From contig NW_005434657.1 of NCBI RefSeq assembly GCF_000315625.1, forward strand, positions 939,430 to 1,003,429: a stretch of DNA of 64,000 nucleotides, written 5' to 3'. Made by a program: the position numbers and the translations under genes. The stretch's first letter is position 1. Each line of letters opens with the position of its first letter. Of this stretch, positions 12,836 through 64,000 are shown one piece after another. The DNA is from Guillardia theta CCMP2712 (taxonomy: Eukaryota > Protista > Cryptophyta). The notes beneath the pieces were generated by a model. That model did no database searches, was not told the origin of the DNA, and worked only from the letters and a program-made list of their open reading frames with translations.

Positions 12836-14760
12836 TCCAGGTCCTGTAAGTACTCTAGCTCTGACCGCTGCAGCACTGGTTGGAGATCGCTCCATGAGGT
12901 GCCTGTGATCGACTGCGGCTCCTATGATGCAGTCTTCTGCGGTCTCTGATATCAGGCTTACTGTGCGAGATGAATGATGAAGAGCGAAGACATGGTCTAA
13001 TTTGGCTTGGTGGTGGCCCTGTTTGTACCATGTGGAGAAGGTGAAATGCGAACTGCTTCTGCTCATCTTTTCGCAGGTGACCATCTGATATCGCCCCAGC
13101 TCATTTAAGTTTCGTTCCATTTCCTCATCTGCGCGGTGCACGTTCCGAAGCGAGTTGCTCCCGTACCCTACTCTCGTGCAGATCTCTGCAAGCTTTCGAG
13201 ATAGGGAAATGTAACGTTCGCCAACAATATTGTTTCTTTTTTGCGGCCAACGTGTAAAACCTGTATTCTTTTTTGGGAGACCTCGCGCTCCTCTTCCATG
13301 GCGAAGTGCCATGGCAGGGGGGGGCGAGGTGCAAGGTCAGCATGCGCTAATGTCATGAGGCGTAGGTCACTCTTACCCTTTCTCCCGCCCCCCGTGCCTT
13401 TCGTGATAAATACTCGATAGCATCCCCATTCCTTCTTGATCATCGTTCGGAGAGCTATCTCTTTCCTCTTCCCCCCTACCAAGACCTCCTGCAGCATTAC
13501 CACACTCGGCTGGTATGTCTCGATCAGGTATCCCAAGATGTGTTTCAGCACAAACTGGCTGCACCCATTAACATTTTGAAAGATGATGTTGCCTGGGGTG
13601 TTATCCTTTCTGTGCATCTCCACCCATGATGGTTGCTCTGATCTTTCTGTTCGCATTGCATTGTGAGGTTTTCTACCTGTTGTTAGTACTTGTTCCTCTT
13701 CCCTATTGGCCCATTGAAGTTGATGTGGTACTCCCCTTCGATCTCTTGCCGGAGAGTGCGTCTCCTCCTCCTCCCTAGTTCCCCTTGCATCGTTCGAAGC
13801 TTGTTCTTTGTGCGTGCCCGCTGGGGGGAGCGATGTGGCCTGAGGCGGCGGTGAGTCCATCTGTTCTGACCTTTCATATGTCCGCAGGTCCGCCATGTTT
13901 CTTGCTTGCCACGATTCTTGCTCTCCCTGCTCCATCTCTTGTGCCTGGGTCACCTCTGCTGCTTGCCATTCCTTGTACCCTTTATCTTGCGCGTGTTGTA
14001 AAGCTCTGCAGATGCCTTTGATCGTTTCTCGCATGCGCACTTTTCCTGGATCCTCCACCCAAAGCGCATCCAGCAGCAGGTGCCTCATCCTCTCGAGCCA
14101 TTGCTGGGGTGGGGGGACGCCTTGCTGCCTACCTGTTTTTGAGATGTCTCGTTGTGTCGGTCTGTTTGTCTTAGCGATCAGCAGCAAATGCAACAGTATG
14201 AAGATCCCACAGTTGTGATTGTCTGTTTGTTGTAGCTCAGTTGACAGGTAAACCCGCCATGTCGTTGCATGTTCCTGCTGGTCGCTGAATGCCTCCGTGA
14301 CAATCGTCGCCGCGAGTGTGGCTAAGTCCATTCGTTGTGCGCCCTCCAGCTGAAACTGTGCCTCCCTTTGACTTCTGACAATCCCCAGGTCTCTCTCAGC
14401 CATGCTGAGTGAGTCAACAATGCGTATTCTTTTTGTGTCAAAATCTGCCATTAGTAAAATCCAATGATTGCCATTCTCTACGCACGGGAATAAGAATGGC
14501 TGAGCTGCCCCGGCTAGTAGTCGCTTTGCTCTCTTTGTCCTCCCCTCTTGATCTCTCAAACAAGCTACTATTCGCGGGAGGACAATAGTCCCTCTCGGCG
14601 ATTCGACCTGGTTTCTAGTTTGCGCGCTCGCGTACCTCTTGTCTCGTAGCCATGCTATTTGAAATCTGTCTTCCACTGGTTGGATACCTTCGCATTTGAA
14701 ATCTGTCTTCCACTGGTTGGATACCTTCGCTCGTCTGCACACTAGTGCCCTGGTCATCAT
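12836..14760 (-). mobile_element. Non-LTR retrotransposon fragment: Ulp1/C48-like cysteine protease plus AP endonuclease (frameshifted)
   Basis: NHWILL..IVDSL..QQTDNHNCG protease motifs, then FQNVNG, VMLQE, FTFSTWYKQ, AKLDHV and AVDHR APE motifs; clearly homologous to the 58.2 kb ORF. Confidence 0.8.
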
Positions 14761-14769
14761 AAGACCTGG

Positions 14770-15905
14770 CCTCCATCTGCCGTTGCCTGTCTGCTATAAA
14801 TTCGGACAGGTACCGCTGCCTGGCATCATCACCCCACTACGGCACCAGCGTCAATCCCTGCCCGCACAACTCCTACAGCCTTGCCGGCTCTATCTCTTCG
14901 GACAACTGCACTTGCAGATACGGCTGGCTGGCCGAGCTGGACTTGCCAGTACGGCAGCAACTTCTACAACTGCTCCGCTGGCAAGTCGTCCAGGAGCTTC
15001 GAACCTGCCCGGCAACAATGACGACGCAGTTTACTGGCAACACGACGATCAGCAACTGCGTCTGCGCTTCAGGCCTGACCTTCAACCTGACAGATCTATG
15101 CGTACCATGCCCGCTGGCGACCTACAAGACCAACTTCAGCCTGTACGGTTGCCAGCCCTGCCCGCGCTTCTTCACTACGTCTTACAACGCACAGTCTGCA
15201 CTTGTCCGAAGGGAAGCGAGCTAGATATCGAAAGCTGCAAGCTCTGTCCTGTTGGTGGGTACAAGAACACAACGTCGTTTGACTCCTACTACCCCTGTCC
15301 GCTCTTCTTCAGCACGGCTTAGAATGGCAGCACCAACTTCAACAACTGCAGCTGCGAAGCTACGTTCTACAGAGGAGCGGAGACTGTCTGCACTTGCGCG
15401 CTGGGCAAGACGCTCCACGGCGAAATCTGCGTCAGTTGCGACATCAACACCTACAAAGACTTCATCAGATACAATGCCTGTATCAACTGTTCGCCAAACT
15501 CCATAACGCTTTCCAACAAACCTTCGTCCTTTGATCAGTGTCTTGCTATCGCTGGCTATTACCGAAACGGAACCAACTTTTTCCAGTGCCCGCAAGCCAC
15601 CTACAAGCCCGCTGTCGGGAATACCAACTGCCCGATTGGCTCTACCACCTTTATACTGGCGCTACACTTGCGGCAAACTGCGTGTCGGATCTTGGATATC
15701 ACCAGAAAAGCGACGGAAGCTTCGCCGCCTGAGCCATCGGGACTTATTCCGACACGACTCTCATCAACACGACGTCCTGCAAGACCTGCTTCCTTGGTTC
15801 TACCACTGCCAGCACAACGGCTACGACTTCCAGTCTCTGCATTGCCGACCTTGGCTACTATGGCAGCAGCGGCGTTTTCATCCAGTGCGCTATTGGGACC
15901 TACAG
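14770..15905 (+). pseudogene. Cys-rich surface protein fragment 3 (GCC2/ephrin-receptor-like repeats, frameshifted)
   Basis: CVPCPLATYK..CQPCP, CKLCPVGGYK, CINCSPNS; ends CAIGTY at the LTR insertion. Confidence 0.75.
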
Positions 15906-27953: not shown

Positions 27954-28450
27954 AGCGCCGGTTATTTCAGGCAGCGCCGGTTATTTCAGGCAGAGCGCCG
28001 GTTATTTCAGGCAGCGCCGGTTATTTCAGGCAGCGCCGGTTATTTCAGGCAGCGCCGGTTATTTCAGGCAGCGCCGGTTATTTCAGGCAGCGCCGGTTAT
28101 TTCAGGCAGCGCCGGTTATTTCAGGCAGCGCCGGTTATTTCAGGCAGCGCCGGTTATTTCAGGCAGCGCCGGTTATTTCAGGCAGCGCCGGTTATTTCAG
28201 GCAGCGCCGGTTATTTCAGGCGAGCGCCGGTTATTTCAGGCAGCGCCGGTTATTTCAGGCAGAGCGCCGGTTATTTCAGGCAGCGCCGGTTATTTCAGGC
28301 GAGCGCCGGTTATTTCAGGCAGCGCCGGTTATTTCAGGCAGAGCGCCGGTTATTTCAGGCAGCGCCGGTTATTTCAGGCAGCGCCGGTTATTTCAGGCAG
28401 AGCGCCGGTTATTTCAGGCATTATTTCAGGCAGCGCCGGTTATTTCAGGC
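27954..28450 (+). repeat. 19-bp minisatellite (about 26 copies)
   Basis: AGCGCCGGTTATTTCAGGC unit with occasional 1-2 nt additions. Confidence 0.97.
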
Positions 28451-30651
28451 ACCATGGCTGCACGCGTGGTGTAGGGGAAGCTGCCAGGGCGCCAAGGAAG
28501 CTGCAAGCGAGAGGTTTGTATACTTCAAATAGCTTTCTAAGTATGGTTCTTCAGTATGATGAAAATGTTCGCAACCTGCTGTATCGGAGATCATGCCAAT
28601 ACACGCAGAGCGGACTTGTGGATGCCTCTGTCCTCGAAGCTGATCTCGTCGAGAGGGTGAAGAGCTTCGCGAAGCGTTATCCGAACATATCGCAGAAGCC
28701 ATCCGCTCGACATGTCAGCAGGCACGACGTGAGCTTCTCCAAGAAGCGATGACTGGATGGAGTGACGCATCCAGAGAGTGGTTTATGCAGCAGATTGAAG
28801 AAGCCAAGAAGGAGAAGGTCGAGACATACACCGCCTCAGCAGGCAACGAGGTGACTTCCTTCATCTCCATGACTCTCCTGGGCATCTCGTCGGTGTCAAC
28901 CATGAAGAAAAGCTGAAGAAGAAATTTGAAGAGATCGGACTGATCGTAGACTCAGTGCAAGAGAGTAAAGCAATCATGTGGAAGGCTCCGTATAGACCCG
29001 AGATAGCGAGTGCTGAGGAGATCCCGGTGACTGTTTCCTTCCTCCGCAATGCACAAGCGGAGAAGCTCTGGCAGGGAAGAGAGGACTTCGCGATTGATGG
29101 TCGCAAGTTCACAGCTGTACATGTGAGCATCGTGCACGATCGATCTTTCAAGATTCGAGCCAAGAGAGGACCCTGGGGCAAAGGGGGCAGCTTGGCAGAG
29201 CTGACTCACCTGCTAACCTTGGGCGGCATGACAACGGCTGAGATAGCTGCCGTCTATCGCTATCAGCTGCTGCGCCAGTCCCTTGCAGCGGTCCAACTCC
29301 AGCCGCTGGCAGGCATGCTGGTCGCTGGGGCGCCAGGCCAGCAAGTCCACAAAGGCTTAGGTCAGAAAGGCTTCATCGCTGTAGGGGCCAACGTCATCTG
29401 GAGACAGAGGGAGGTGGAGTGGATCGTCTCCTCGAGCTGCCCAGAGGCGAATGATACAGCATTTCGAGCTTTCCGAGAGAGCGAAGCGATGGAGGGAGTA
29501 CACCTGACTCTGTTCAGCGAGGACCCGAAGATCAGAGAGGCGCTCGCAGTCGAGTTGACAGCTGATCGCTTTGTGTCCAGAAATAAGGTGAAGAAGGCAT
29601 CAAGGATGCAGTCAAGTCGACGGCGGCATCTGGTCGCTTCACGAGGAAGGAGATGGAGGGGCTGTGCAACGGCGGCAACACGTCTATCGCAAGAGTCAAG
29701 AGAGTCCTGTTGGAGATCGCTAACAGGCTCGAGATCAACGTTGAAGGCATCGACATGGAGGAGGATTTGAACACCAAGTCCTGGAACGGGTCCAAGCTAT
29801 GCATCCTCCTCGGCTCCACGGAGGATGCTCGACGCATGCATCCTCCTCGGCTCCACGGAGGATGCTCGACGCGTGATGAAGGAGCTGCCCTTCTATCTCG
29901 AAGGCGCAGCAACCAAGCTCGAAGCAGTCGGCTTCGACAAGGAGCCTGACTCTGAGGCGGCTGGTCAGCGGGGCACCAGCGACGCAGCGCAGCGACAGGA
30001 GGAGAGCGAGGGAGAGTGGCTGGAGTTTACAGACCTGGAGAGGATCACAATGGAGGCAGCATCTCCGTCAAGCCAAGAGGACATGCAGCTCGTCAGCGAG
30101 CTGTCAGCAGTCATCGAAGATGCAGCTTCTTTGAACGAGGCGGGGACGAGCGAGCCGATCAAGCTGGTCCTGGACAAGGCCGTTGGCAACCTCCACGACA
30201 CCTTCTACTCTCCGGGGAGCCTGGAGTTCATGTCGCTGGGAGAGTGGGCGAAGATGCCAGAGGAGCAGGGAGTTGGGCGCAACGTTCTCAAGGAGAAGCT
30301 GGGGAAGTGGCTGCAGAGCAAGCGCTGGACTCGCGTGCAAGGAGAGAGCAAGAAGGCAAGGAGGGGCAGCGCGTTCTCGCCACGGGCAACGGCAGCTGCT
30401 GAGCTTGAGCAGGAGGCGGAGAGCGACGACATAGAGCGTCGATCTCTTAGCTTCCTGTTCATAGCACTGAGTAAATTCGCAGAGATGCATGTGCTGGCCT
30501 GCTCGCTGAAGGTGGACAAGAAGGACCGACTGCGAGTGGAGATGAGGGGAGATGACGAAGAAGAGGAAGACATGGAGGAAGAGCAAGGCGAGGGCGAGGA
30601 AGAAGACGGGGCGAGCCCGTACCGAGCTTGAGCTGAGCTCAAGGTAAGTAG

Positions 30652-30869
30652 AGAAGGTGGAGGCGACCGAAAGCCAAGGTGAGGAGAGGCAACTCTCCTG
30701 ACTGAAGCTGAGGAAGCTGAATGGAGGAGGAGTAGGTGGCGACCGAAGGCCAAGGTGAGGAGAGGCAACTCTTCTGACTGAGGCTGAGGAAGCTGAATGG
30801 AGGTAGAGTAGGTGGTGACCGAAGGCCAAGGTGAGGAGAGGCAACTCTCCTGACTGAGGCTGAGGAAGC
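30652..30869 (+). repeat. 76-bp 3' UTR tandem repeat (about 3 copies) with a GCAA tetraloop hairpin
   Basis: AGGAGAG-GCAA-CTCTCCT hairpin (one G-U pair in the second unit); also present at about 57870-58039. Confidence 0.9.
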
Positions 30870-31044
30870 CAAGAGAAGACAGCAGAAGTAGAGAGTAGAA
30901 AGACGCCTCAGAAGCAGGGTTCGCATTGTAGGCCGTGTACTCCAGGTGCTCGAGCGCCTCTTTAGACTAGGATCAAATTGCATAAGCCCACAACGAGGCC
31001 GAGCAACATTCTAGCATTCTAATAAACTCACATAATAATAATAA

Positions 31045-31328
31045 TAGGGTTTAGGGTTTAGGGTTTAGGGTTTAGGGTTTAGGACCGGGCCCCTGACAGA
31101 GGCACCGGGCCCCTGACAGAGGCACCGGGCCCCTGACAGAGGCACCGGGCCCCTGACAGAGGCACCGGGCCCCTGACAGAGGCACCGGGCCCCTGACAGA
31201 GGCACCGGGCCCCTGACAGAGGCACCGGGCCCCTGACAGAGGCACCGGGCCCCTGACAGAGGCACAGGGCCCCTGACAGAGGCACCGGGCCCCTGACAGG
31301 GGTTTAGGGTTTAGGGTTTAGGGTTTAG
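31045..31328 (+). repeat. 20-bp minisatellite (about 11 copies, 31083-31298) between two TTTAGGG arrays
   Basis: ACCGGGCCCCTGACAGAGGC unit; telomeric repeats at 31045-31082 and 31298-31328. Confidence 0.97.
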
Positions 31329-32702
31329 TAGACAACATCGCACATGTAGACATCATCGCACATGGTACTCATCGCACACACGATGAAAGAAATGCGAGAA
31401 TTGGTAGCAGTGGTGGATTCCTTCTGCAAATGGTCAGGACTGCAAATCAACAATAAGAAATCAGAGATAACCAGCTTCGACTATGCTCGCAAGGGAGAGG
31501 TTCCTGGTGCGAACAAAATAACGGTCATGGGGGAACCTGTCGAAGCCCTACCGGCTACTAAACCGTTCAAATATCTCGGCTATCGCATCTCTCTGTGGAA
31601 GGAAGAAAGACGAGCACCACGCTACGGATGTTTGAGGGAGACGACAGGAATGGAGGAAGCATACACCTCGGACTGATGTCGGAAGATGAAAAAATCCTCA
31701 AATGGTTCACTACTCAGGTTAGTGCAATCACCAGGGTAACGAGACAGCATCCAATTAGGTTGGACTTCTTGCCCGACGCGCTAGGAGCAGTACCACGAAG
31801 AGTGACCTATGAGGTACTGGTCAAGAGTAAAGCACAGAAGGGAAGGTTCACCAGAGAGGAAGCTGAACAGATCTGCGACGGGGAGGATCTCTCTATGGGC
31901 ATGACAATTCGAGGACTGAGACGGATCGTGGCGAGCTGGAAGGAGTCAGCGGCTGAGCACATCGTCAAGATCTCCTCGAAAGAAGATGTCGAGACCAACA
32001 GCTGGAACGGTGAACATCTAGTGCTCAGCTTCTCAGAAAAAGAAACGGCGATTGACATCCTCAGGTCCTTTGCGCCATGGGACAGGGCAGGGAAACTTCT
32101 TCTCCTAGAGCCAGGCAGTGCCAACATCTGGGAAGCGATCGCTACAGAACCCCCTACAGAGCCTCTTTGGGCTCAGGTAGATCTCGAACGGATCGAGAAT
32201 GAGATCAACATCCCAGAACCAGAGGCAAACGTGGTCCTCGAAGACATCTACAAAGTTCTAGAGGAGACTGTCAACCAGGGACAGAGTGCAGAAAACCAAG
32301 CTTGCAAACTCAGGCTCGATGGAGCCATCGTCGGCCTGTACGACAGCTTGTCATCTCCTGGAAATGCATGTTTTCCGACGCTGAAGGAATGGGCGGAATC
32401 ATCCTCGGCAACCCAGGACGACGACATGCAAGTTTTGAAGAGTAAGATTGCAAGAGTAAGCGAGCAGCATGCGTGGGAGACGGTAGCATCAAGAAGACGC
32501 CAGGGAGCCTTTGCAAAAGCAACAGGGAGAGGAGGGGAGAAACAACAAAAAGAATTTCGAACTGACCTGTTGTTTCTTGCCCTGAATAAAGTAGTTTCCA
32601 CAGCTACGCTAACCTACCAAGGCAGCGTTGGCTCGGGAGACGAAATTGAGTTTCTCTTGAGCAAGGCAGGATAGGGACTTCGGGTAGTACGTTACACCAG
32701 GC
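31329..32702 (+). mobile_element. Chimeric telomeric element: RT fragment joined to a diverged homolog of the RT-less element ORF
   Basis: 31360-31613 equals 60903-61156 (one mismatch seen); 31614-32674 shares HLxLxSEDxKI, KSxAxxGRFTR, TxSWNG, DLERI, KLxLDxAxxxLxDxxxSPG and LFxALxK with copies A and B. Confidence 0.88.
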
Positions 32703-36878: not shown

Positions 36879-39800
36879 GGTATCTCCCTTCACTTCGTCC
36901 CTGCACCTGCATGGCCCCAGTACCCCACATTGTGTCCACGACCCCAGCACCCCCCTCTCCCACAGTCTCAACCCTTGTTGACTTCTCCCACCCCCTACAA
37001 TCCAGTGAACTTACATCCACACCCCTCCTTATTCCCCAGGTGCTCCATACTACCCCCGTCAAGATAAAAATTCCTTCTGCTGACTACCCCTATGTACCCC
37101 CTCAATTACCCTTCCTCGTATCTCGTACCCTACCCTTGTATTCCAAAGCATCCAACCACCCCTCCTTTCACCACATACCTTATTCGACCACCCCATGTTA
37201 TGTTACCTCTGCGATTTTTCAACCCTACCCTACCGCAGGGCTCACCTAGTTGACTGGTAGAGCAACAGTCGACCAACTGCCAGGACGCAAGGGTGGGTAG
37301 GTGTATTATTGGGACAACATAGGTAGACAGGGGGTAGGGTACTGAAAAGCTAACAACAGGGTGGGGAAATCGAAGGTTCGATTTCCTTACAGGAGTAGGG
37401 TGGTCATACCCGAAAGTTAAACTGGCAGGGAGGGTGGTGACAGGACAGATGGAAACATGGGTGGAATATATGGGAATAGGGGGGTAGGGGTACACATTCT
37501 GAGGGATATGGCAGGACTGTGTTGTAAGTTTGCAGAGGGTAGGAAGCGACTCCTGGACAGGGGGGGTGCTCGCGTTGATGCTCGGAATTGATGATGGGGG
37601 TGGGGTGATTGGATGCATTGGAGTTGGAATAGGGGTACTTGCACGGAAATTTCATCTGCTTTGGTAGGGAGGGGTTATCATGACAACCCGCTCCATGAGT
37701 GGGTAGGGTACAACAGGCAATATCAGGGGTAGGTGATCACTACAATCATTTTACCATTATCAATGCGGAAGAGGACCTTTTTGACACTCCACCCCTGGTT
37801 AGATTTTGCTCAGAACCAGGGGTAGAGATAAGAGATTTTTCTAAAAACGATGGGGACCCAGGACAATTTTGTACACCGAAGGAAAATGAAAAAAGATATA
37901 TCTGGAATTTGCTCGTAGGGGGTAGCAGGGGGTACTACCACCGATCCATCGTTTTGTTTAAACAAAGTGGGTAGGGGGTAGGGTCATGTGAGAACTCCAA
38001 AAAAAAAATTAGAGGTTTGCAAGGTGACTACCTCTCATACTCACAACCTACCCCACTATTGAAGTTGCCGTTGAGATTACACCCCACCCCCTATCTTGCA
38101 TCAATCAGACTCTCTAAAGCACCCGTTCATCTGGCTGATTAGCAACTTTAACAGGTAGGGTTGGTCAATGGTACCCAACTAGTACCCGACCCCCGATTTT
38201 GACACACCGGTACTCACTGTCACCACCCCTACCCAAACTTTCGGTCTTGTCCCCAACTTTTTTGGCCTGACGGTGACTTCGAAGTACCCGGGTAGATCGA
38301 CCGGAATGATCGTGGAATGGCAAGGGTAGGGTGGTCATCCATGAGCCCGGGCCGACTGCCTCCGGACAGATCAGTACTCGGAAGCCTACTTAGTCCTCCA
38401 GTGAAATTTTCCCCCATTGTGACGGTGCTCAAAGTTAAAAATCAGCCTTGAAGTTAAGTTCAATATCTGACACTCACTGAACTATAACTTTGCTGAGTAA
38501 AGAACTCACCGGGCGCTATCATGGGTCGGAGTCGCCGGGGGCCTGAGTGGGCCTGCGACCGTACTAACTAACGGCGGTTGAACCGTCGGGCAAGTTCGGA
38601 ACTTGAACACTGACTCGGACCGCCGACCGTCCCGGACCGCTCGGATAATGAGTCAGGGCCCGGCCGTCAAGTTGATGGCCGCGGCGCGGCGGGCAGGCTG
38701 TGCCACTGGTCGGACTCGGATCGGCCCGCCGATCATCGGATCGGACTGGACTCGGCCGCCGGGCCCGCTCCCAGGCCCGAGGGGCCCGGGCCGCCGCCGA
38801 GCGGCCCCTTTCCGGCCCCGGGGGCCCGGCACCGTGACCGTGGCACCCGGTCGCGTCACGGACCGTACTGTACGGTCCGACTGACTCGGTCCGACCGGCG
38901 ATCGGACATTGAGGCTGTCACGAGTCACTGAGGCTGCGGGCCGCCGCGAGCCGCCGCCCCCCCCCCGCCGCCGCCGGACGCCGATCGGACCGTACCCAGA
39001 CCGTCGGACCCCGTATAGTACGGTGACCGTACGCCGGGGCGGCGGAGCGCAGTCCCTGGCACGGTCGTCCCAGTCCGGGATCATCCGAGGCATCCGATCG
39101 GCCGGCCGACCGCGCGCGGCGGCGGGCCGACCGTGGGCAGGCGCTCTCCCGGAGCGGCTCGAACTCCCCGGCTCACTGACTCTCACTGAGTCAGCCGGCA
39201 GTCTTCCGAGTCAACTTTGCTGACGGTTCGGAGCCCGCCGGGCCGCCAGTTTACTCAAAGTTAAGTTAAAAACTTCTCTTCTGCCCACCCCACCCCTGGA
39301 ATTAAGTTCACTCTCAATCTACCCCACCCTAATTCTCACCATCACCCTGACCTAGAAGTCCCGTGTGTACTCTCATGATAATTCCTAGCTACTACCGGTA
39401 CATCAGTACCCCTCACCCCTCTGACAACTAACCCCACCCTCCATGTACAAGGTAACACGATGGTAAAGATCCGAAAAAGATCCGTGTCTCTTGGAACACC
39501 CTACCCTACTATGAGTATATGGACCCTACAATCTCCTGAATTACCCGTTCTTGCATGGGTATATTTGTGGTGGACACTGGATGGGGTACCTACCCCCACC
39601 ACCTCTATCCAACAAGAAATTTTGGGGGCGCTGGTTGGGCATAGCCTTGCGTATAGTACCCCTCTGGGACCTCTATTTTGATGGGGTGGTGAAAGGTATC
39701 GTGACCGGCTTTTAGGGCCACCAAAGGTCGCTACCAACTAAGGGCCGGACCACCCCTACCCTATTTTCATCAAACAACTACCCTGGAAAAACGATCAGGG

Positions 39801-40361: not shown

Positions 40362-41837
40362 ATGACGTGTACCGCCATGGACAGCTCTCCGCAGCTGCCG
40401 TCAGGTAACTAAAGCCCGCTCTCTACCCTTGCCCTCTCTTGAATCGCACCATGGCCTCATCTCCGATCTGCGTCCAGTGCTGCTTGTCTCTTCCATTCGT
40501 GTTATGTCGCAACCTGGTGCTTGACTAGTCTGACATCGCATGCAGGACCCTCTTCTATCCCCGCACACCGACGGGCCTCTGATTCTCTGGAAGAGAGCAT
40601 CTCGACGCCGCAGAACAGCAAGGCGCCGGAAGTCCTGGACCTGCGCAACAAGTCGGCGTCATGCTCGGTCTTCGAGCTTGCAAACCGATACACGGTGAAG
40701 AAGGTGATCGGAAAGGGAGCTTTTGGTTGTGTCGTAGCAGGAGAGGACGAGTTCGGTAACCCGGTAGCTATCAAGAAGCTCAGTCATGCCGTCTCCGACA
40801 GCCGCTCGTCTCGACGGCTCCTCCGTGAGCTGAGATTTCTCCGCCACGTTCGGGGACACCCCAACGTCATCTCAGTGGAGGATGTGGTGGTGAAGCAGAG
40901 GGGCGGTGAGGTGGACGTGTACATCGTGACGGAGCTCATGGAGGCGGACCTGGAGCAGATCATCAAGTCCTCCCAGGCCCTCACGACCGAGCACGTCCGT
41001 TGCCTCATCTTTCAGATCATCAACGGGCTCCGGCACATCCACTCGGCCGGGATCGTCCACAGGGACCTGAAGCCTGCCAACATGATCGTGGACTCAGAGT
41101 GCCGGCTCAAGATCTGCGACCTCGGGCTCAGCCGGCACATCGCCGACCCGTCGGTCTCGCAGCACTACGACGCCAAGTTCACCGACTACGTGGTCACTCG
41201 GTGGTACCGCGCTCCTGAGCTGCTGCTGGGGAACAGGATCTACGACCACAAGGTGGACTTGTGGGCAGCTGGTTGTATCCTGGGGGAGCTGCTGGGGAGG
41301 AAGGCGCTGTTCAAGGGGTCAGACACTGGAGACATGCTGAGGAAGCAGGTGGGAGTGATAGGAAGCCCCTCGGAGGCGGACCTGGCGATGCTGACAGGAG
41401 ACGAGGCCGCGAGGAACTACATGAGAAAGATGCCGGTGCGGCCCCGGGTGAACTCGTTCGAGCTCTTCCCGGGGGGAGACTTGGCGGCGCTGGAGCTGCT
41501 GGACTCGTTGCTGCAGTGGGACAGCAGGCGGAGGATCGGAGCCGACGAGGCACTAAGGAGCTCCTTCCTTCTCGAGCTGTTCGAACCCGCCAGCAGCCTT
41601 GCCACCAACCACTGCGAACTCGCAGCGATCTCGTGCGGGTCGTTGGGGAGCGAGCAAGTGACGAACTTGATCTTCCTGGAAGGAGCCCTGTGGAGGACGA
41701 GGAGCGGACATCGCTGTTCCCCTATCGACCTGGAGATGCGCAGCAACCCGCGGGTCCCTCACTTTTGCGCATGCTCGTGCGGGCAGAAGTTCAGGAGGGG
41801 ATGCGACTTTCTGCAGCACTTAGAGGGCCTCGCATGA
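40362..41837 (+). CDS. MAP kinase with a TDY activation loop; short first exon upstream of 40547
   Basis: GKGAFG, VAIKK, HRDLKPAN, DLGLSR, TDYVVTRWYRAPE. Confidence 0.93.
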
Positions 41838-55596: not shown

Positions 55597-55655
55597 TTTA
55601 GGGTTTAAGGGTTTAGGGTTTAAGGGTTTAGGGTTTAAGGGTTTAGGGTTTAGGG
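55597..55655 (+). repeat. Telomeric array mixing TTTAGGG and TTTAAGGG
   Basis: Direct reading. Confidence 0.95.
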
Positions 55656-58039
55656 CGCCGTTATTTTCGGCTGCGCCGTTATTTTCGGCAGCATGGCTCC
55701 TTGCCAGGTGTAGGGGAAGCCGCCAGGGCGCCAAGGAAGCTGCAAGCGAGAGGTTTGTATACTTCAAATAGCTTTCTAAGTATGGTTCTTCAGTATGATG
55801 AAAATGTTCGCAACCTGCTGTATCGGAGATCATGCCAATACACGCAGAGCGGACTTGTGGATGCCTCTGTCCTCGAAGCTGATCTCGTCGAGAGGGTGAA
55901 GAGCTTCGCGAAGCGTTATCCGAACAGCAGGACAGCCCAGGCTTGCAAGGCTGTGGCCCGGGGATGCACCCCCGACGCTATCGCAGAAGCCATCCGCTCG
56001 ACATGTCAGCAGGCACGACGTGAGCTTCTGCAAGAAGCGATGACTGGATGGAGTGACGCATCCAGAGAGTGGTTTATGCAGCAGATTGAAGAAGCCAAGA
56101 AGGAGAAGGTCGAGACATACACCGCCTCAGCAGGCAACGAGGTGACTTCCTTCATCTCCATGACTCTCCTGGGCATCTCCTCGGTGTATGTCAACCATGA
56201 AGAAAAGCTGAAGAAGAAATTTGAAGAGATCGGACTGATCGTAGACTCAGTGCAAGAGAGTAAAGCAATCATGTGGAAGGCTCCGTATAGACCCGAGATA
56301 GCGAGTGCTGAGGAGATCCCGGTGACTGTTTCCTTCCAAGCGGAGAAGCTCTGGCAGGGAAGAGAGGACTTCGCGATCGATGGTCGCAAGTTCACAGCTG
56401 TACATGTGAGCATCGTGCACGATCGATCTTTCAAGATTCGAGCCAAGAGAGCCTCCGACCCTGGGGCAAAGGGGGCAGCTTGGCAGAGCTGACTCACCTG
56501 CTAACCTTGGGCGGCATGACAACGGCTGAGATAGCTGCCGTCTATCGCTATCAGCTGCTGCGCCAGTCCCTTGCAGCGGTCCAACTCCAGCCGCTGGCAG
56601 GCATGCTGGTCGCTGGGGCGCCAGGACAGCAAGTCCACAAAGGCTTAGGTCAGAAAGGCTTCATCGCTGTAGGGGCCAACGTCATCTGGAGACAGAGGGA
56701 GGTGGAGTGGATCGTCTCCTCGAGCTGCCCAGAGGCGAATGATACAGCATTTCGAGCTTTCCGAGAGAGCGAAGCGATGGAGGGAGTACACCTGACTCTG
56801 TTCAGCGAGGACCCGAAGATCAGAGAGGCGCTCGCAGTCGAGTTGACAGCTGATCGCTTTGTGTCCAGAAATAAGTTGAAGAAGGCATCAAGGATGCAGA
56901 AGAAGGCAGGCGGCAAGGACGGCAAGGAGATCAAGATCATCATCAAGTCGACGGCGGCATCTGGTCGCTTCACGAGGAAGGAGATGGAGGGGCTGTGCAA
57001 CGGCGGCAACACGTCTATCGCAAGAGTCAAGAGAGTCTTGTTGGAGATCGCTAACAGGCTCGAGATCAACGTTGAAGGCACCGACATGGAGGAGGATTTG
57101 AACACCAAGTCCTGGAACGGGTCCAAGCTATGCATCCTCCTCGGCTCCACGGAGGATGCTCGACGCATGATGAAGGAGCTGCCCTTCTATCTCGAAGGCG
57201 CAGCAACCAAGCTCGAAGCAGTCGGCTTCGACAAGGAGCCTGACTCTGAGGCGGCTGGTCAGCGGGGCACCAGCGACGCAGCGCAGCGACAGGAGGAGAG
57301 CGAGGGAGAGTGGCTGGAGTTTACAGACCTGGAGAGGATCACAATGGAGGCAGCATCTCCGTCAAGCCAAGAGGACATGCAGTTCGTCAGCGAGCTGTCA
57401 GCAGTCATCGAAGATGCAGCTTCTTTGAACGAGGCGGGGACGAGCGAGCCGATCAAGCTGGTCCTGGACAAGGCCGTTGGCAACCTCCACGACACCTTCT
57501 ACTCTCCGGGGAGCCTGGAGTTCATGTCGCTGGGAGAGTGGGCGAAGATGCCAGAGGAGCAGGGAGTTGGGCGCAACGTTCTCAAGGAGAAGCTGGGGAA
57601 GTGGCTGCAGAGCAAGCGCTGGACTCGCGTGCAAGGAGAGCGACGGCATAGAGCGTCGATCTCTTAGCCTCCTGTTCATAGCACTGAGTAAATTCGCAGA
57701 GATGCATGTGCTGGCCTGCTCGCTGAAGGTGGACAAGAAGGACCGACTGCGAGTGGAGATGAGGGAAGATGACGAAGAAGAGGAAGACATGGAGGAAGAG
57801 CAAGGCGAGGGCGAGGAAGAAGACGGGGCGAGCCCGTACCGAGCTTGAGCTGAGCCCAAGGTAAGGAGAGAAGGTAGGAGGCGACCGAAGGCCAAGGTGA
57901 GGAGAGGCAACTCTCCTGACTAAGGCTGAGGAAGCTGAATGGAGGACGAGTAGGTGGCGACCGAAGGCCAAGGTGAGGAGAGGCAACTCTCCTGACTGAG
58001 GCTGAGGAAGCTGAATGGAGGTAGAGTAGGTGGTGACCG
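55655..58039 (+). mobile_element. RT-less telomere-inserted retroelement, copy B (3'-truncated)
   Basis: Near-identical to copy A; starts with two 18-bp units GCGCCGTTATTTTCGGC(T/A); ORF pieces 55701-57848; ends inside the 76-bp repeats directly on TTTAGGG. Confidence 0.88.
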
Positions 58040-58088
58040 TTTAGGGTTTAGGGTTTAGGGTTTAGGGTTTAGGGTTTAGGGGTTTAGG
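58040..58088 (+). repeat. Interstitial (TTTAGGG)n
   Basis: About 7 units. Confidence 0.97.
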
Positions 58089-61000
58089 AGAATGCACAAT
58101 CAGGAGAGAAAACCTCCCAGAGAGGGAAGGAGCGGAGGGGGGAAAGGCAGGAGGAGCAAAGGGGCAATGATTGGGCGCAGATGCATCGAAAAAGTTCAGA
58201 CCCAGGTTTCCTCATCTCACAAAATGTGAATGGTTGCAATCACTTTGTTCTCAAGCACATCCTCGCATACTTAATCCAGTCCTTCCAACCTGGGGTTGTG
58301 CTACTACAAGAGGTAAGGGTCTCGGCCCGCGACGAGAACAAATTAAGGAAGATGATCAAGGAGAACTGGGCCTGCTACAGAATCTTCCTGGGGCCTGCAA
58401 AGATCAATGCGAAGAAGGGGAAAGGAGACCTGAGGTTGGTAACGCTGGTACATGCGGCCCTGTCGCCGTCACCCTCCCCTGCCGCTCACCAGGCGTGCAA
58501 CAAAGAAAAGAAATATCGAAACCGAGTGTTTTCGATCAAAGTCGGAACAGGGAAAAACTCTTTCTTAGTCACAAACCTCCATCAGGTACCTGCGGAAAAT
58601 GCGATTCGAGAGCAAGGGGAACTGTGGGCAGAGCTGCTACACCTCGCTCTGGGAACGAGAGAGACACACATCATAGCCGGAGACTTTAATGCAGCAAGAA
58701 CCAACACAACAACACCAATGCGGAGAGGATATTCCCCCTCATCTATCACCGCAAAAGCAGATGAGAGATTCGAGAAATTCCTGGCAGACCTTTCCGCACA
58801 CCGTACACTCTCATATGAACAGATCAGCGAGACTGGGACAACATTTACCTTCTCAACATGGTACAAACAAGAACTGATAGAAGCCAAACTCGACGCAGTT
58901 CTCGCTATTCACCCCCCAAGTGACGAGGACAACTTTCCAAACATCTCCCTTCAATCGTGGACGGTCGACGGCTGTGTGATAGGGGGAGCAGTTGATCACA
59001 GAGCCCTGGTGGTGCAAGTACACACCAAGTTCACGTCCGAGGAGACGCAGCTAATCCCACGAGTAGAAGTGCATCAGATGAAGTCACGACAGAAGAAGGG
59101 GGAAACCCCTAAAAGCAGATGGGTGCTGGATCGCGATTCGTGGGAGGAGAAGAAGATCGAATGGGCGCAACAACTAGATGCAAACATACGAGACATGCGA
59201 GCTAAGGCGCAAGAATGTAACATTTGTGAGATGCTCGCCAACTCTCTACCACTAAAGGAGGTGAAAATCAGAAAGGGAGGGAGGCGACATTCGAACAAAG
59301 AACAAATGGATTTGAAGAGATCGATCCGCAACTTGCGGACTAAACTTAGGGAAGCATCACAGCAAAGCCCAGCGACTGGAGTACCTACGGAAGCTACATT
59401 ACAAAGAGAATTGCGAACTAAGATCGAGAGGTTCAGAACGATATGTGAAGAACAAAACAACGAAGTTTTCCAAGAGATCTGCCAACAGCAGCAAACACGG
59501 CTAGGCACGGTAGGCAGCCGTGAATCCCAGAATGCAATGGGACGCAAGAATGATTTCATTCCCAAAGAACCGATGATAAGTCAAGACATCAAGAAAAAAC
59601 ACCCCAACTCCCTTCGTTGCCACAAAGGCTTGGCTCTTCGACTGCTCGGCAAGATAGTCGACAATGCCGACGAGCTCATCAACCAAATCGAAGCAACCCT
59701 ATCTAGCGAAGACACGAGGGGCGTTAGAGCATTTTGGAGTGCAAACCAGCAACTGATGATTGGGATCGAGCGAGAGGGGACAGATGACTGGATCTTTCTA
59801 TCACTGCTACCTGCAAACACAATCACGAAAGCAATTGTAGCACTAGAAGAATCGGATAAAACAACATGGGAGATAGCAGGATACCGTGATCTCACGGATC
59901 ATCTCCCAATGCAGAAGGTTAGAGAGCTAGAGGACGCGGACCATACACGATTCTTCTTCAGCGTCAACGCATGCACGAAACAAGGGACCTGCTCAAAATG
60001 CTCAAACATCGGATGTATGCTCCCCTTGGCTGACTCAAGCGACGAGACCATCGGAGGGGGAGGGATTACCCCGTACTGCACAAAATGTAAGTCGTTCACA
60101 ACCGTGGCCCCAAGACGGATCACACCGCCTGAGGGGGTGCAGCTTTCAAGGAGACAACAACAGGAAATCACCAGACCCCTGGCACCGGGAGAGATTGATG
60201 TCTGGCTCGCCTCGGCGCCGAGACGAAAGGCTGCAGGACTTGACCTCATTTCGAACGAAGTGCTGCGGGCGCTGCCACCAGCATGCCGAGAGGAAGTTGG
60301 CAAGTTAGTCAATGCAGCCCTAGAAGGCAAAGCTGAGGTTCTCAACAAGACAGCGAGAGTACGCCTCCTGCCAAAAAATCAATTCTGTCACATTCTCGAA
60401 AACATGCGGCCAATATGCGTCATGTCAACGCTTACTCGACTAGTTCAGGCAATCCTGGCGCATCGTCTGAGTAAGACAGTAGAAGCAAATAACGTCCTCA
60501 CAAACTTCCAGGAGGGGTTCCGTCCAGGCAGAAGCACAAGTCGGCAGGCTCATCGACTGATCTCGATCGTAGAAGAAGCAGAAGAGGCCAAAACGTCCCT
60601 CATTCTCTTGTACCTGGACTTTGCGAACTTCTTTAACAATGTGGCGATCGAGGTGGTCGAGCAGGCAATGAACAGCCTAGGCTTCCATCCTGAAGACATT
60701 AGAACTGTGATAGCCTGCAACAGTGGAGTCGAACTGCAAATACAAACAAACGAGTTCAACACAGGGAAAATACCTCTAATAATCGGGCTGCCACAAGGTG
60801 GAGCAAGTAGCCCACAACTGGCCAACTTGGTGCTATGCATCCTCTCTAGGCAATTGGACAAGTGCAGCACAGGAACAACAAACAACCTGTCCTTCGCCGA
60901 TGACATGGTACTCATCGCACACACGATGAAAGAAATGCGAGAGTTGGTAGCAGTGGTGGATTCCTTCTGCAAATGGTCAGGACTGCAAATCAACAATAAG

Positions 61001-64000
61001 AAATCAGAGATAACCAGCTTCGACTATGCTCGCAAGGGAGAGGTTCCTGGTGCGAACAAAATAACGGTCATGGGGGAACCTGTCGAAGCCCTACCGGCTA
61101 CTAAACCGTTCAAATATCTCGGCTATCGCATCTCTCTGTGGAAGGAAGAAAGACGAAGAATAAAGGGCTGCCCTTTCACTTGGGGAGAACGAGCATACGT
61201 CTTTGAAAAAACCAAAGAACTGATCAACAATATCAGCTCGTCGAGTTATACTCCTGCGCAAAAATTTTACCTGGTGAAAGTTGGAATTCTCAACGTCTTT
61301 CGCTACTCCGCAGTCATGACTGGATGGACTTGGCGAGACCTACAAGAATTAGATCAACTGTGGATACGAGCTTTTAAAAAAGCGTTAGGCCTAAGCAAAA
61401 GTACAGGGAATGGTATATTCTACCTGCCAACAGAGAATGGAGGGCTGCAGGTCCCTCATCCTGCCCCAATCCTAGGGAGAGCAGCGTTACGATACATCGA
61501 ACGAGAAGTGAATAGTAAGCATGGTGGAGACATCCAAGATAGACTGATATCTAAACTCAGAAACTCGTGCGTAAAATGGGGGTGTCAAACAATGCTTGAG
61601 CTCCAAAGAGAAATGAATTTTCGAACTATGGAGCGGGATGTGGTGCGGGGACCCGAAGCTTTAGCAGTCTGGCTGGCGGAAAAACTAAACACGAGGATCA
61701 GCTGGGCCCATATAGAAGCAGGTCACCTACCTGGAAGCATCTCCCTCCTTCATAGGATGGAGGATATGGTGGCAAACTTGAACGACTGTAACAGACCACA
61801 GGGCTGGACGAACTTCCAAGCCTTATGGAGGCAACTCCCGAAACTCCAATTCTCCTTGCTACGCAATGTACGACCTATCGCGGACGAAGAACTGCATTTG
61901 CCAAGGAAGCTCTGGCCTTTCCCAAGGCAACGCGAGGAGGCGGAGGGGATCGTAATGCAATTGCTACAAGAAAATGTCATCTGGGTAAGCAGCGTCAACA
62001 GAGCATCAGGAACAAAGAGGAAAAGACGAGAGGCTGTCACACAGGATAGTGCTACAACCCGAAAACGAAAGTCACACCCGCAATCAGAGGAGGACCGGGA
62101 GGAGACATCCAAAAAGCATCGGGAAGCAGCAGAAGAGAGAAGGCCACACCCAGCTCATGCAAACACAAGATCCCTCATGGCTAAATTACTAGGCAATCTG
62201 GATCAACAGGAACACCTTATCCTAAAAGGTAAGGAAAGTTTCAAAATCAAGGGCGACATAGCAATCATGGACCGGCCCAGAAGTCACACGGGCCAAGAAC
62301 AAGACATCAAAGAAGCCGAACCTTCCCTTCGCTCGGCGCCATTTGCGAGGAAAGAAGATGAAGATGGCGCCAAGAACCCAGAGAAGACAGAGATCCTACT
62401 GCAAATTGCTAAGCATATCAGCAAAAAACACAACAGCTTACTCAACTCGCAAGCTTGGTGGGAACATCTAACCACCGCCATGGCTGAAATTCGAGATAGA
62501 CAACAAGGCCTTCCGCTGTCGTACGAATTTCTAGAACACTTGGGGATGCTCGCTGAAACAAAACAGTTCAGCAACTGGCCCACCCTCTATCACCCGACAA
62601 TCCAGGCCGCAACAGACAGCTTGCAGGACGACGAGGTTCGACGTGAAATAATATGGATCGACCAACAGGAGCAATACCTCAGCCACGCCGCATGCGAGTC
62701 CGGAACAATCATGATCGGATGGAACCAAACTTGCTTCAGGAAAGAAATCCCTGACGGCTTCATGCTAGTCGGTAAGGTACCTAAAGGATCAGAAATATGT
62801 TACGCTGCAAATTTCTGGAGGACGGGCGATCGGAGCCTCAGGAAGTCACAAGACGACCTGATTGTCTACTGCAAAGAGTCGGAACAAGAGAGAATAATTG
62901 TCCAACTCACAGTACACCTGATCCCTGAACGGGAGGAGCTACAAGAATACCGAAGGAAGCAAAACGAAAACTATCAAGCCTCGGCCAAACAGGAGAAGAA
63001 CAGGAACCACGTGTGGTCCGCAATCCACGGCGACATATCACGAAACAGGAAGGGTCGATCAATGTCGATAGGATACAGCACGCAGGAAAAGGAAGGAGAG
63101 CAGGAACGCGGAGCGATCAAGATACACGGAAAATGTAGCGTCATCAGAGCACATACCATCGCACTCTGCATACTCCTACAAGCGATTTGGGAACAAAGAG
63201 GCAAACAGAAAACAATCAGGAAAATCTTCGTCCTCTTTAAATCAACCCGAATGCATCGCTTTCTTACGGACACCCTCAGATGGTCTACCATGCAGTATGA
63301 AGACGAGCTCGTATACGACTTGGCAGGAAGACTGCAGGAATGCCTGAGCAAATTTCAGCGGGAAGGCATTGAGATCAACCTCTCTCTGATCGCAGACCAC
63401 ACCGTAGTGCAAGAAGCTGCAGAGGAAGCTCGCAAGGGAAAATCCTCCTTCTCCTCCACGTGGGAAAGGGCCCTCATCGACAGCGACTTGGGATTCTGCA
63501 TTGCAGACGAAGAGAACTTCAAGCCGGGGATGGATCGACTGAAAATATGGGATAAGATAATCAGAGAAGAACAACTGGAACTGAGGAGGAAAGAAGCCCC
63601 CCTTACCTTGACGGAAACCTTTCTCCTGGAACCACAAGTGGGCAGAAGGATCCTAGGTCGAGCCTTACAGAGGTGTCGAGGATCAGTACTTCGGACAGCC
63701 ATCCAAGCTATTACCTGGTCAGCACCTACGAGGAAAAAGCTGTTCCAGTGGAAGAAGACGACATCCCCCTGTTGCCCATGGTGCGAAGGCAGGGAAGAAA
63801 GCTGGGTGCATATCCAGCTAGCCTGCAAAGAATTTGAGCTCATGATCGCTTTGGCACACAACAGAGTAATGGAGACAATCAAGGGATGCCTGACAGAAAG
63901 CTGGAAGAAGAAAAGTGTTGAACAGGAGAGTTGGTGGCAAACGCCAATCAACTCTATGACAGGGCTAGGACTGAGCTATAAAAAAGACGATCTGAGTAAT
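58089..64000 (+). mobile_element. 5'-truncated non-LTR retrotransposon with a long open ORF (APE, Zn ribbon, RT, degenerate RNase H, CCHC); runs off the window
   Basis: Frame of ATG 58181, absent from the ORF track, consistent with no stop before the window end: SQNVNG, LLQE, AGDFN, KLDAV, VDHR; KAAGLD, NMRPI, QEGFRPGRST, LDFANFFN, GLPQG, FADD, FKYLG; CPWC..ESWVHIQLAC..AHN. Confidence 0.93.

What the first reader, a model, noticed from the sequence alone, without database searches (positions are those of the whole stretch)
58089..64000. Dualen-like architecture: APE, Zn ribbon, RT, catalytically eroded RNase H, RLE-type CCHC finger
Seen: an ORF of about 1940 codons missed by the ORF track. 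It has a CSKC..CTKC zinc ribbon just before RT (about 59970-60095) and a long insert after RT. An RNase H-like segment (about 63010-63430) has HGDIS and VIRAHTIAL in place of TDGS and RAELxAI. The finger CxxC..E..HI..C..AHN resembles those preceding restriction-like endonucleases. Known: Dualen/RandI elements combine APE, RNase H and RLE. Inference: a dual-endonuclease element adapted to telomeric repeats.
Basis: partly seen in the sequence, partly recalled or inferred. Interest (0 to 1): 0.8.

Follow-up and report, generated by a model that had tools for sequence, protein, structure and literature searches.

The report
Telomere-targeting Dualen retrotransposon in Guillardia
This is a copy of a jumping gene of the rare 'Dualen' type (a LINE that carries two different DNA-cutting enzymes) in the alga Guillardia theta; the type is already known from cryptophytes, but this lineage inserts only into the chromosome-end repeat TTTAGGG and has kept a catalytically dead RNase H domain.

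Summary
Window 58088-64000 (+) is one open frame of 1971 codons (1940 from the first ATG) that runs off the window. It encodes an APE endonuclease, a four-Cys zinc ribbon, an RT, an RNase H fold lacking three of its four catalytic carboxylates, and an R2-type CCHC finger followed by AHN.

The restriction-like endonuclease (RLE) is not visible in this copy. The copy departs from its own family 25 nt before the window ends. A same-family copy in Guillardia theta CCMP2712, 99.5% identical over the last shared 190 nt, runs straight into IPDG...VEIAR...KFQEKEQKY. The 45%-identical full-length relatives also end in a domain that folds like the R2 RLE.

So this is a Dualen/RandI-type LINE. That architecture (C48 peptidase, APE, RT, RNase H, CCHC, RLE) was already published for cryptophytes in 2016.

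Three features were not found in the searchable literature:
- Strict insertion into TTTAGGG tracts, in one orientation and one phase, forming head-to-tail arrays at scaffold ends.
- An inactivated RNase H that is still under purifying selection.
- ORF1-only partner elements.

This copy lacks ORF1 and the Ulp1 domain and is probably 5'-truncated. Another first-reader note (s1-433078) reports a similar dead-RNase-H Dualen-like pol elsewhere in this genome.

The parts
58040..58088 (+). (TTTAGGG)7 tract, the 5' flank and target of the ORF2 copy. The junction reads ...TTTAGG|AGAATG.
   Evidence: No letters from there were sent to any search tool afterwards.
58088..64000 (+). Open frame of 1971 codons (first ATG at 58181) encoding the Dualen-type ORF2. 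It runs off the window end.
58217..59005 (+). APE endonuclease. Motifs: QN (aa 45-46), QE (74-75), GDFN (198-201), LD (268-269), DH (303-304). The position of L1 Tyr115, recalled from memory, is His in this whole lineage.
   Evidence: Pfam Exo_endo_phos E 4e-8. Motif positions. Weak L1 EN match in the PDB.
59966..60088 (+). Four-Cys zinc ribbon (C635, C638, C664, C667) just upstream of the RT.
   Evidence: The Cys residues are invariant and also present in P0004 and P0005. The fold was not tested.
60371..61132 (+). Reverse transcriptase with the FADD box at 60893-60904.
   Evidence: Pfam RVT_1 E 5.5e-35. PDB: R2 at 84 bits versus L1 at 54 bits.
61133..62980 (+). Conserved post-RT region: a thumb-like part, a K/R/E-rich linker and a beta-rich pre-RNase H domain. 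It has no Pfam family.
63010..63430 (+). RNase H fold with a degenerate active site. The D10 equivalent is H1647, E48 is H1689 and D70 is K1717. Only the D134 equivalent (D1770) is kept.
   Evidence: Alignment with the canonical RNase H of P0004 and P0005. Foldseek gives RNase H1 at E 3e-6, TM 0.6-0.7. dN/dS in the sister family is 0.09.
63770..63868 (+). R2-type CCHC finger (C1896, C1899, H1908, C1913) followed by the AHN helix that precedes the RLE.
   Evidence: PDB profile hit to R2 proteins, E 2.4e-7. Pfam zf-RVT is weak. Alignments.
63975..64000 (+). Last 25-26 nt. They no longer match the family sequence, which 17 codons later would reach IPDG of the RLE. This is the breakpoint of an insertion, a rearrangement or an assembly join.
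55655..58039 (+). Upstream neighbour: an ORF1-only element. It has 18-bp 5' repeats and a frameshifted ORF1, is cut inside its 76-bp repeats, and is flanked by TTTAGGG on both sides.
27954..31044 (+). Second ORF1-only element, with a complete 3' end: ...TAATAAACTCACATAATAATAATAATA, then GGGTTTA repeats.
31360..31613 (+). 254-bp RT fragment 99.6% identical to 60903-61156, behind a TTTAGGG tract. It shows the family was active recently.
12893..14838 (-). Fragment of the sister (P0001-type) Dualen family carrying the Ulp1/C48 peptidase and APE.

Best explanation
The ORF is the pol (ORF2) of a Dualen/RandI-type non-LTR retrotransposon of Guillardia theta.

Shown:
- The domain order is APE, zinc ribbon, RT, conserved linker domains, inactive RNase H fold, R2-type CCHC finger.
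- In the family consensus a PD-(D/E)xK restriction-like endonuclease follows.
- Full-length relatives add an upstream ORF1 and an N-terminal Ulp1/C48 peptidase, and begin with 18-20-bp tandem repeats.
- This copy starts directly behind a (TTTAGGG)7 tract.

Inferred about this copy:
- It is probably 5'-truncated, because it has no ORF1 and no Ulp1.
- Whether its RLE is intact cannot be seen.

Inferred mechanism, from junctions:
- The lineage integrates by target-primed reverse transcription into TTTAGGG tracts, always with the sense strand on the G-rich strand.
- The C-strand is nicked at about CCC^TAAA. Its 3' end primes on an RNA whose (ATA)n or (CTA)n tail ends in UA and which can read through into GGGUUUA.
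- The G-strand is opened 1-3 nt away, at TTTAG^G^G.
- Repeated insertion builds head-to-tail arrays separated by 2-16 telomeric units at chromosome ends.
- ORF1-only elements share only the last ~20 nt of the 3' end (TCTAATAAAxTC.. plus a trinucleotide tail). They are presumably copied in trans.

The RNase H domain has lost catalysis but is kept by selection. It is presumably a structural or nucleic-acid-binding module, with template RNA removal left to host enzymes. Which endonuclease cuts which strand is unknown.
For: Architecture:
- Pfam APE and RT.
- P0001 and P0002 are 45% identical over 98% of the ORF and end in PDG..LIEFAR..KKFQEKEEKY.
- P0004, P0005 and P0006 carry APE, or APE homology by alignment, together with the CCHC-RLE module.
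- R2 zinc-finger/RLE matches by sequence profile (E 2.4e-7) and by fold (E 1.4e-7).
- RNase H fold with replaced catalytic residues; dN/dS is 0.09 on that domain between L001 and L004.

Same family with an RLE in G. theta:
- L007 nt 10664-10853 are 99.5% identical to window 63785-63974 and continue into the RLE, a 3'UTR and (GGGTTTA)12.

Telomere targeting:
- Every TTTAGGG tract in the window and in L004 and L007-L011 is G-strand on the element's sense strand, with no C-strand runs.
- Seven of eight 3' junctions read (A/C)TA|GGGTTTA.
- Most 5' junctions fall at TTTAG(G)(G)|.
- All five G. theta loci lie 0-44 kb from a scaffold end with the G-strand pointing outward.
- TTTAGGG is the cryptomonad telomere repeat (PMC3622300).

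Transcription:
- P0027, an MMETSP transcript ORF, is 100% identical across the part of the ORF it covers, to about aa 1751.
- P0003 comes from a Hanusia phi record in EukProt.

Literature:
- Cryptophyte Dualens with C48, APE, RT, RNase H, CCHC and RLE are described in PMC5029228.
Against: - The RLE of this copy is not in the window, and the copy leaves the family sequence at 63975/6. It may be interrupted or rearranged.
- No RT tree with named Dualen, NeSL, R2, L1/Tx1 or R1 references was built.
- The window also holds host genes (kinase at 40443-41834, Na/Ca exchanger at 35724-37010) beyond the 27.9-32.7 kb element cluster. Not every tract is therefore terminal.
- 5' truncation is inferred from relatives only. 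The 31 codons upstream of the ATG are open but not informative.
- The cleavage sites are read from junctions, not measured.
Confidence: 0.85

Rival explanations
1. The TTTAGGG tracts are not targets. They are tails made or carried by the element itself (templated read-through or RT slippage), and the element can insert anywhere. Arrays arise only because new copies land near old tails.
For: Tracts between elements are short, 2-16 units. The L001 contig ends in ..ATA GGGTTTAGGGTTTAGG, so telomeric units can be contiguous with the element in an assembled contig. In the window, host genes lie beyond one element cluster.
Against: The 5' junctions are also telomeric and phase-restricted, even where the upstream sequence is not an element 3' end (window 27925, 55593; L009 9475; L010 9697). 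The motif equals the host telomere repeat. All five G. theta loci sit at scaffold ends with correct outward polarity. A tract follows a 3'-truncated element at 58039, which cannot be that element's own tail.
Confidence: 0.08
2. An ordinary APE-only LINE (L1/Tx1- or R1-like) whose C-terminal CCHC finger is the common zf-RVT type, with no second endonuclease.
For: Pfam gives only a weak zf-RVT hit for the finger (E 0.006). The RLE is not visible in the window, and the last 25 nt diverge from the family.
Against: The same-family copy L007 and all full-length relatives continue from this finger into an RLE. The finger-plus-RLE profile and fold match R2. The RT is closer to R2 than to L1.
Confidence: 0.03
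3. This copy is a complete, Ulp1-less and ORF1-less subfamily that starts at the ATG at 58181, or is expressed by read-through from the upstream ORF1-only element. It is not a 5'-truncated dead copy.
For: The frame is intact over 1971 codons. The MHRK start is conserved in P0001. The same layout, an ORF1-only element followed by a short telomeric tract and then ORF2, recurs in L010.
Against: In L010 the ORF2 starts at a different point (P0001 aa 773), as expected for random 5' truncation. Full-length relatives have 5' tandem repeats, ORF1 and Ulp1. The ORF1 type fused to this family's RLE in L007 is type B, not the type A that lies upstream here.
Confidence: 0.15

Closest known systems
Cryptophyte Dualen elements (Dualen-1_GCr, Dualen-5_CCu, and a 2543-aa Tara Oceans ORF; Lescot et al. 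2016, PMC5029228)
   Same: C48/Ulp1 peptidase, APE, RT, RNase H, CCHC finger and RLE in one pol, in a cryptophyte host. The full-length relatives P0001 and P0002 (2573 and 2575 aa) have this order.
   Different: The published description, as read, mentions no telomeric target, no loss of the RNase H active site and no ORF1-only partners. Dualen-1_GCr also has a SET domain that is not seen here. No direct sequence comparison was possible because no Repbase sequences were available.
Dualen/RandI of Chlamydomonas reinhardtii (Kojima and Fujiwara 2005; active Dualen-4b_cRei, PMC9977147)
   Same: APE and RLE in one non-LTR element, together with RNase H. A cysteine protease in these elements is recalled from memory, not from a paper read here.
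   Different: The active Chlamydomonas family shows no reported target specificity and makes very long target duplications, with a median of 900 bp. Here the target is a fixed phase of a 7-bp repeat with a 1-3 nt offset, and the RNase H is inactive.
R2 (solved structures 9dou, 9nl2, 9nl3, 8gh6)
   Same: The C-terminal CCHC finger, (R/A)HN helix and PD..(D/E)..K..KY endonuclease match by sequence profile and by fold. The RT is closer to R2 than to L1. Both insert site-specifically into a multicopy target.
   Different: R2 has no APE and no RNase H fold, and it targets 28S rDNA using N-terminal ZF/Myb domains.
SART1 and TRAS1 of Bombyx mori (R1 clade, telomeric-repeat-specific APE LINEs; PMC7265360 was listed but not read)
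   Same: Orientation- and phase-specific insertion into the host telomeric repeat, forming arrays at chromosome ends. As with SART1, the sense strand lies on the G-rich strand.
   Different: Those elements have a single endonuclease (APE), no RLE and a different RT clade. These points rest on my own knowledge.
HeT-A with TART/TAHRE of Drosophila (own knowledge)
   Same: A gag-only element family coexists with pol-encoding elements in head-to-tail terminal arrays.
   Different: The Drosophila elements attach to chromosome ends without telomeric repeats or telomerase and point the opposite way. Here TTTAGGG tracts persist between elements.

Membership tests
Dualen/RandI non-LTR retrotransposons | APE-type endonuclease N-terminal to the RT in the same ORF | tested here: met
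   Pfam Exo_endo_phos at aa 44-227, E 4e-8, and RVT_1 at aa 762-1015. The catalytic motifs N, E, D, N, D and DH are present.
Dualen/RandI non-LTR retrotransposons | PD-(D/E)xK restriction-like endonuclease C-terminal to the RT in the same ORF | tested here: inconclusive
   It is not visible in this copy: the window ends, and the copy diverges at 63975/6. It is met in the same family (L007/P0029: IPDG..VEIAR..KFQEKEQKY) and in P0001, P0002, P0004, P0005 and P0006. The fold matches the R2 RLE.
Dualen/RandI non-LTR retrotransposons | CCHC finger preceding the RLE, of the R2 type | tested here: met
   C1896, C1899, H1908 and C1913 followed by AHN. The profile matches R2 at E 2.4e-7.
Dualen/RandI non-LTR retrotransposons | RNase H domain between RT and RLE | tested here: met
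   The fold is present (Foldseek E 3e-6 to RNase H1) and homologous to the canonical RNase H of P0004 and P0005. However, three of four catalytic carboxylates are replaced.
Dualen/RandI non-LTR retrotransposons | RT branches with Dualen/RandI, between the RLE clades and the APE clades | not tested
   No named Repbase references were available. As an indirect measure only, the RT scores 84 bits to R2 and 54 bits to L1 ORF2p. The nearest database relatives all have APE plus RLE.
Cryptophyte Dualen (Lescot et al. 2016) | C48/Ulp1 peptidase N-terminal to the APE | tested here: not met
   It is absent from this copy, where the frame starts at the telomeric tract. It is present in P0001 and P0002 and in the window's minus-strand fragment at 12893-14838. 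The absence is probably due to 5' truncation.
Telomeric-repeat-specific LINEs (functional class) | Both flanks are host telomeric repeats, with fixed orientation and fixed phase in independent copies | tested here: met
   For this copy only the 5' flank is visible. For the lineage, both flanks were seen in the window, L004, L007, L009 and L010, and a single junction in L001 and L008. There are no C-strand runs on the sense strand.

The most novel reading that the evidence does not exclude
Guillardia theta chromosome ends are built from head-to-tail arrays of a Dualen lineage and its ORF1-only and ORF1-RLE deletion partners. These insert at one phase of TTTAGGG. This would be the first target-specific Dualen and a protist counterpart of the Bombyx SART/TRAS system. 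It would offer a 7-bp defined target on which the division of labour between the APE and RLE nucleases, and the role of a dead RNase H, can be measured.
Probability: 0.5. Interest if true: 0.6.

Novelty: new variant of a known kind. Interest (0 to 1): 0.45.

Why it matters
Dualen elements are taken as the living intermediate between RLE-type and APE-type LINEs, yet nobody knows what the two nucleases each do. A lineage with a fixed 7-bp target, precise junctions, recent activity and a culturable, sequenced host makes that question testable with oligonucleotide cleavage assays. It also adds a telomere-associated retrotransposon system from a cryptomonad, far from insects, fungi and green algae. 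Finally, it gives a second example, after the retroviral connection domain, of an RNase H fold kept by a retroelement pol after it lost catalysis. The domain architecture itself is not new.

Tried and rejected
- **Read laying.** I have no read-level evidence on expression, on the 5' end or on what follows 64000. After that I masked or left out those places in every search.
- **Extending past 64000.** This failed. The metagenome scan returned only the L004 contig again. P0027 is not on record as a gene. No G. theta gene model lies on this exact locus: the best ORF1 model, P0030, is on another scaffold end.
- **The last 25 nt.** They match nothing in the window or in the fetched loci.
- **RT phylogeny with Dualen, NeSL, R2, L1/Tx1 and R1.** Not done, because no named reference sequences could be obtained. 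PDB bit scores were used as a crude proxy.
- **ORF1.** It has no Pfam family and no ESM Atlas neighbour.
- **Literature.** Searches for a telomere-specific Dualen or for G. theta telomeric retrotransposons found nothing. Repbase itself could not be consulted.
- **The upstream ORF1 unit as this ORF2's own ORF1.** Rejected. It recurs as an independent element with its own 3' end. The ORF1 fused to this family's RLE in L007 is a different type.
- **The big representative search.** Not used, because relatives were already found.


Full report
**1. The observation**

On the + strand the frame that opens at 58088 has 1971 codons without a stop and runs off the window. It was missing from the ORF list only because that list drops ORFs that touch an end.

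- Pfam finds Exo_endo_phos (aa 44-227, E 4e-8), RVT_1 (aa 762-1015, E 5.5e-35) and a weak zf-RVT hit (aa 1877-1914).

**2. Relatives and architecture**

The word search found five informative relatives:

| Protein | Length | Identity to the ORF | Source |
|---|---|---|---|
| P0001, P0002 | 2573, 2575 aa | 45% and 44%, over 98-99% of the ORF | JGI contigs |
| P0003 | 1295 aa | 48% | Hanusia phi, a cryptophyte |
| P0004, P0005 | 3028, 3341 aa | about 26% | ENA/Tara and Logan contigs |

The alignment shows these domains in P0001 and P0002:
- An N-terminal Ulp1/C48 peptidase (Pfam).
- The APE.
- The four-Cys ribbon, with all four Cys invariant.
- The RT.
- A long conserved region.
- The finger.
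- Finally WIPDG..(13)..LIEFARTSE..KKFQEKEEKYAHL, a PD-(D/E)xK motif of the R2 kind.

P0004 and P0005 have the same order, with a canonical Pfam RNase_H (E 3e-13) and RPDG..FIVEVARTKD..KELKYAKL. P0006 (2115 aa, APE plus RT by Pfam) also carries the finger-RLE module.

A profile of the C-terminal region hits only R2 proteins in the PDB (9nl3, 9dou, 9nl2; E 2.4e-7). The alignment covers the finger, the (R/A)HN helix and the PD..D..K..KY nuclease. The AlphaFold model of the P0001 C-terminus (pLDDT 71) finds R2Tg, R2Pm and R2Bm first (E 1e-7 to 8e-5), followed by cap-snatching PD-(D/E)xK nucleases.

**3. RNase H**

In the alignment with P0004 and P0005 the four catalytic positions compare as follows:

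| Canonical motif (catalytic residue) | Window ORF | P0001, P0002, P0003 |
|---|---|---|
| ATDGS (D10) | IHGDI, giving H1647 | E, E, H |
| RAELAA (E48) | RAHTIA, giving H1689 | N, N, Y |
| VDSS (D70) | FKST, giving K1717 | Q, Q, Q |
| ADHLAV (D134) | ADHTVV, D1770 kept | not aligned to D in P0001 and P0002; N in P0003 |

The model of window aa 1500-1971 has the beta1-3, alphaA, beta4, alphaB-D, beta5, alphaE order, with pLDDT 65-84 in that segment. Its best PDB matches are all RNase H1 (human, E. coli, Halobacterium; E 3e-6, TM 0.6-0.7 by target).

Between the two sister-family copies L001 and L004 the domain has dN/dS 0.09. That is as low as the RT (0.08), while an inter-domain linker drifts at 0.81. 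The fold is therefore retained by selection without its active site. Pfam finds no second RNase H in the two ORF stretches scanned apart, aa 342-704 and 1005-1557.

**4. The RLE of this copy**

The window ends before the PDG motif. P0029 (GUITHDRAFT_116523 of Guillardia theta CCMP2712) is identical to the ORF from EGREESWVHIQLAC to ...PINSMTGLGL. It then continues TAPEHGNLIPDGLCYFRGSNRIVLVEIARTSE..KFQEKEQKYAAL.

Its locus L007 is one uninterrupted ORF. Nt 10664-10853 are 99.5% identical to window 63785-63974. After the shared ...GGACTGA the two sequences have nothing in common, and the window's last 25 nt match nothing else I hold. The spacing from W.TP to IPDG in P0029 equals that of P0001, so the family form is the L007 form.

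The window copy therefore has an insertion, a rearrangement or an assembly join 17 codons before the nuclease motif. The family has an RLE. For this copy it cannot be decided.

**5. Organism**

Four lines of evidence identify the genome as G. theta or a near-identical strain:
- P0029 (above).
- More than 30 GUITHDRAFT proteins matching the upstream ORF1 at up to 98%.
- An MMETSP transcript ORF, P0027, that is 100% identical to the ORF as far as about aa 1751.
- TTTAGGG, inferred as the likely ancestral cryptomonad telomere repeat (PMC3622300).

**6. Telomeric targeting**

The structure of full elements comes from two contigs. The JGI contigs L001 and L004 carry a full element: 20-bp 5' repeats, ORF1 of 712-713 aa, and ORF2. 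L001 ends in ...TCTAATAAACTCAAATAATAATA followed by GGGTTTAGGGTTTAGG. L004 ends in the same sequence followed by 16 telomeric units to the contig end. L004 is preceded by three units and by the 3' end of another element that is 81% identical to window 30867-31069.

In the window, the ORF2 copy starts at ...TTTAGG|AGAATG. The ORF1-only units at 27954-31044 and 55655-58039 are flanked by tracts in the same way.

Across the window and L004 and L007-L011:
- All tracts are G-strand on the element's sense strand; none is C-strand.
- Seven of eight 3' junctions read (A/C)TA|GGGTTTA.
- Most 5' junctions end at TTTAG, TTTAGG or TTTAGGG.

All five G. theta loci lie 0-44 kb from a scaffold end with the G-strand pointing outward. 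In L010 a P0001-type ORF2, truncated at aa 773, follows an ORF1-only element and a short tract, which is the same layout as here.

I infer a C-strand nick at about CCC^TAAA that primes on the UA-ending tail or on read-through GGGUUUA. The G-strand break would lie 1-3 nt away. This is read from junctions and is not measured.

**7. This copy**

It has no 5' repeats, no ORF1 and no Ulp1. The ORF1 unit upstream is a separate element: it recurs independently with its own 3' end, is frameshifted, and is of type A. The ORF1 fused to this family's RLE in L007 is type B. I take the copy to be 5'-truncated, with about 75% confidence. A 254-bp fragment 99.6% identical to its RT lies at 31360-31613, so the family was active recently.

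**8. What is known**

- Lescot et al. (PMC5029228) described cryptophyte Dualens with C48 peptidase, APE, RT, RNase H, CCHC and RLE, and a 2543-aa Tara ORF.
- PMC12747079 reports LINE/Dualen as expanded in all cryptophyte genomes except G. theta.
- Chlamydomonas Dualen-4b is active and makes long target duplications, with no target specificity mentioned.
- I found no paper linking Dualen, or G. theta, to telomeric insertion. Repbase notes could not be checked.

**9. Verdict**

The architecture is a known kind. The telomeric specificity, the dead but conserved RNase H and the ORF1-only and ORF1-RLE partner elements are variant features that appear undescribed.

Noticed in passing
window 27954-31044 and 55655-58039; L008, L009, L010: ORF1-only elements of about 2.4-3.2 kb: 18-20-bp 5' tandem repeats, an ORF1 of about 700 aa with no Pfam family, 76-bp repeats and their own 3' end. 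They form a family of more than 30 annotated 'hypothetical proteins' in G. theta, in at least two types (A and B, about 50-57% aa identity). They share only the last ~20 nt with the pol-encoding elements.
   Followed up: partly
window 58030-58039; L008 9940-9950: The ORF1-only element is cut at nearly the same spot inside its 76-bp repeat (..GACCG| and ..GACCGAAG|) and joined to a TTTAGGG tract in two independent loci. Possible causes are internal priming on G-rich RNA sites or telomerase healing. This is unexplained.
   Followed up: partly
L007 9317-11829 (P0029); L011 10001-12284 (P0034 model): RT-less deletion derivatives fuse the front of ORF1 to the CCHC-RLE module. In L007 this is one uninterrupted 419-aa ORF flanked by telomeric tracts. 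Derivatives exist for both pol families.
   Followed up: partly
window 12893-14838 (-): Fragment of the sister Dualen family, 75-88% nt identical to L001 and L004, with the Ulp1/C48 peptidase and APE. It is preceded by a 35-codon piece of ORF1.
   Followed up: yes
window 31084-31299: Eleven copies of a 20-bp unit (ACCGGGCCCCTGACAGAGGC) lie between two TTTAGGG tracts with no element body attached. They look like a 5' repeat array on its own.
   Followed up: no
window 16174-21596 (+): Chromovirus-type LTR retrotransposon. The gag has a zinc knuckle; the pol has protease, RT, RNase H, integrase and a chromodomain.
   Followed up: partly
window 24302-25423 (+): ORF with a strong Poxvirus VLTF3-like domain (E 2e-49). 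This is a giant-virus-like insert near the telomeric tracts.
   Followed up: no
L002/L003 (Tara/ENA contigs): A distant Dualen-like giant element. It has a 1903-aa ORF, a separate UCH ubiquitin-hydrolase ORF (578 aa), and a 3028-aa pol with a weak primase-like (AEP C962R) N-terminus, APE, zinc ribbon, RT, canonical RNase H, CCHC and RLE.
   Followed up: partly
P0031 (EukProt, Heterocapsa arctica): A protein filed under a dinoflagellate is 99% identical to the G. theta ORF1. This is probably cryptophyte carry-over in that transcriptome.
   Followed up: no
P0027 (MMETSP transcript): A transcript ORF is identical to the window ORF as far as about aa 1751, then shifts frame inside the RNase H-like domain. 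It comes from a variant or deleted copy that is transcribed.
   Followed up: partly
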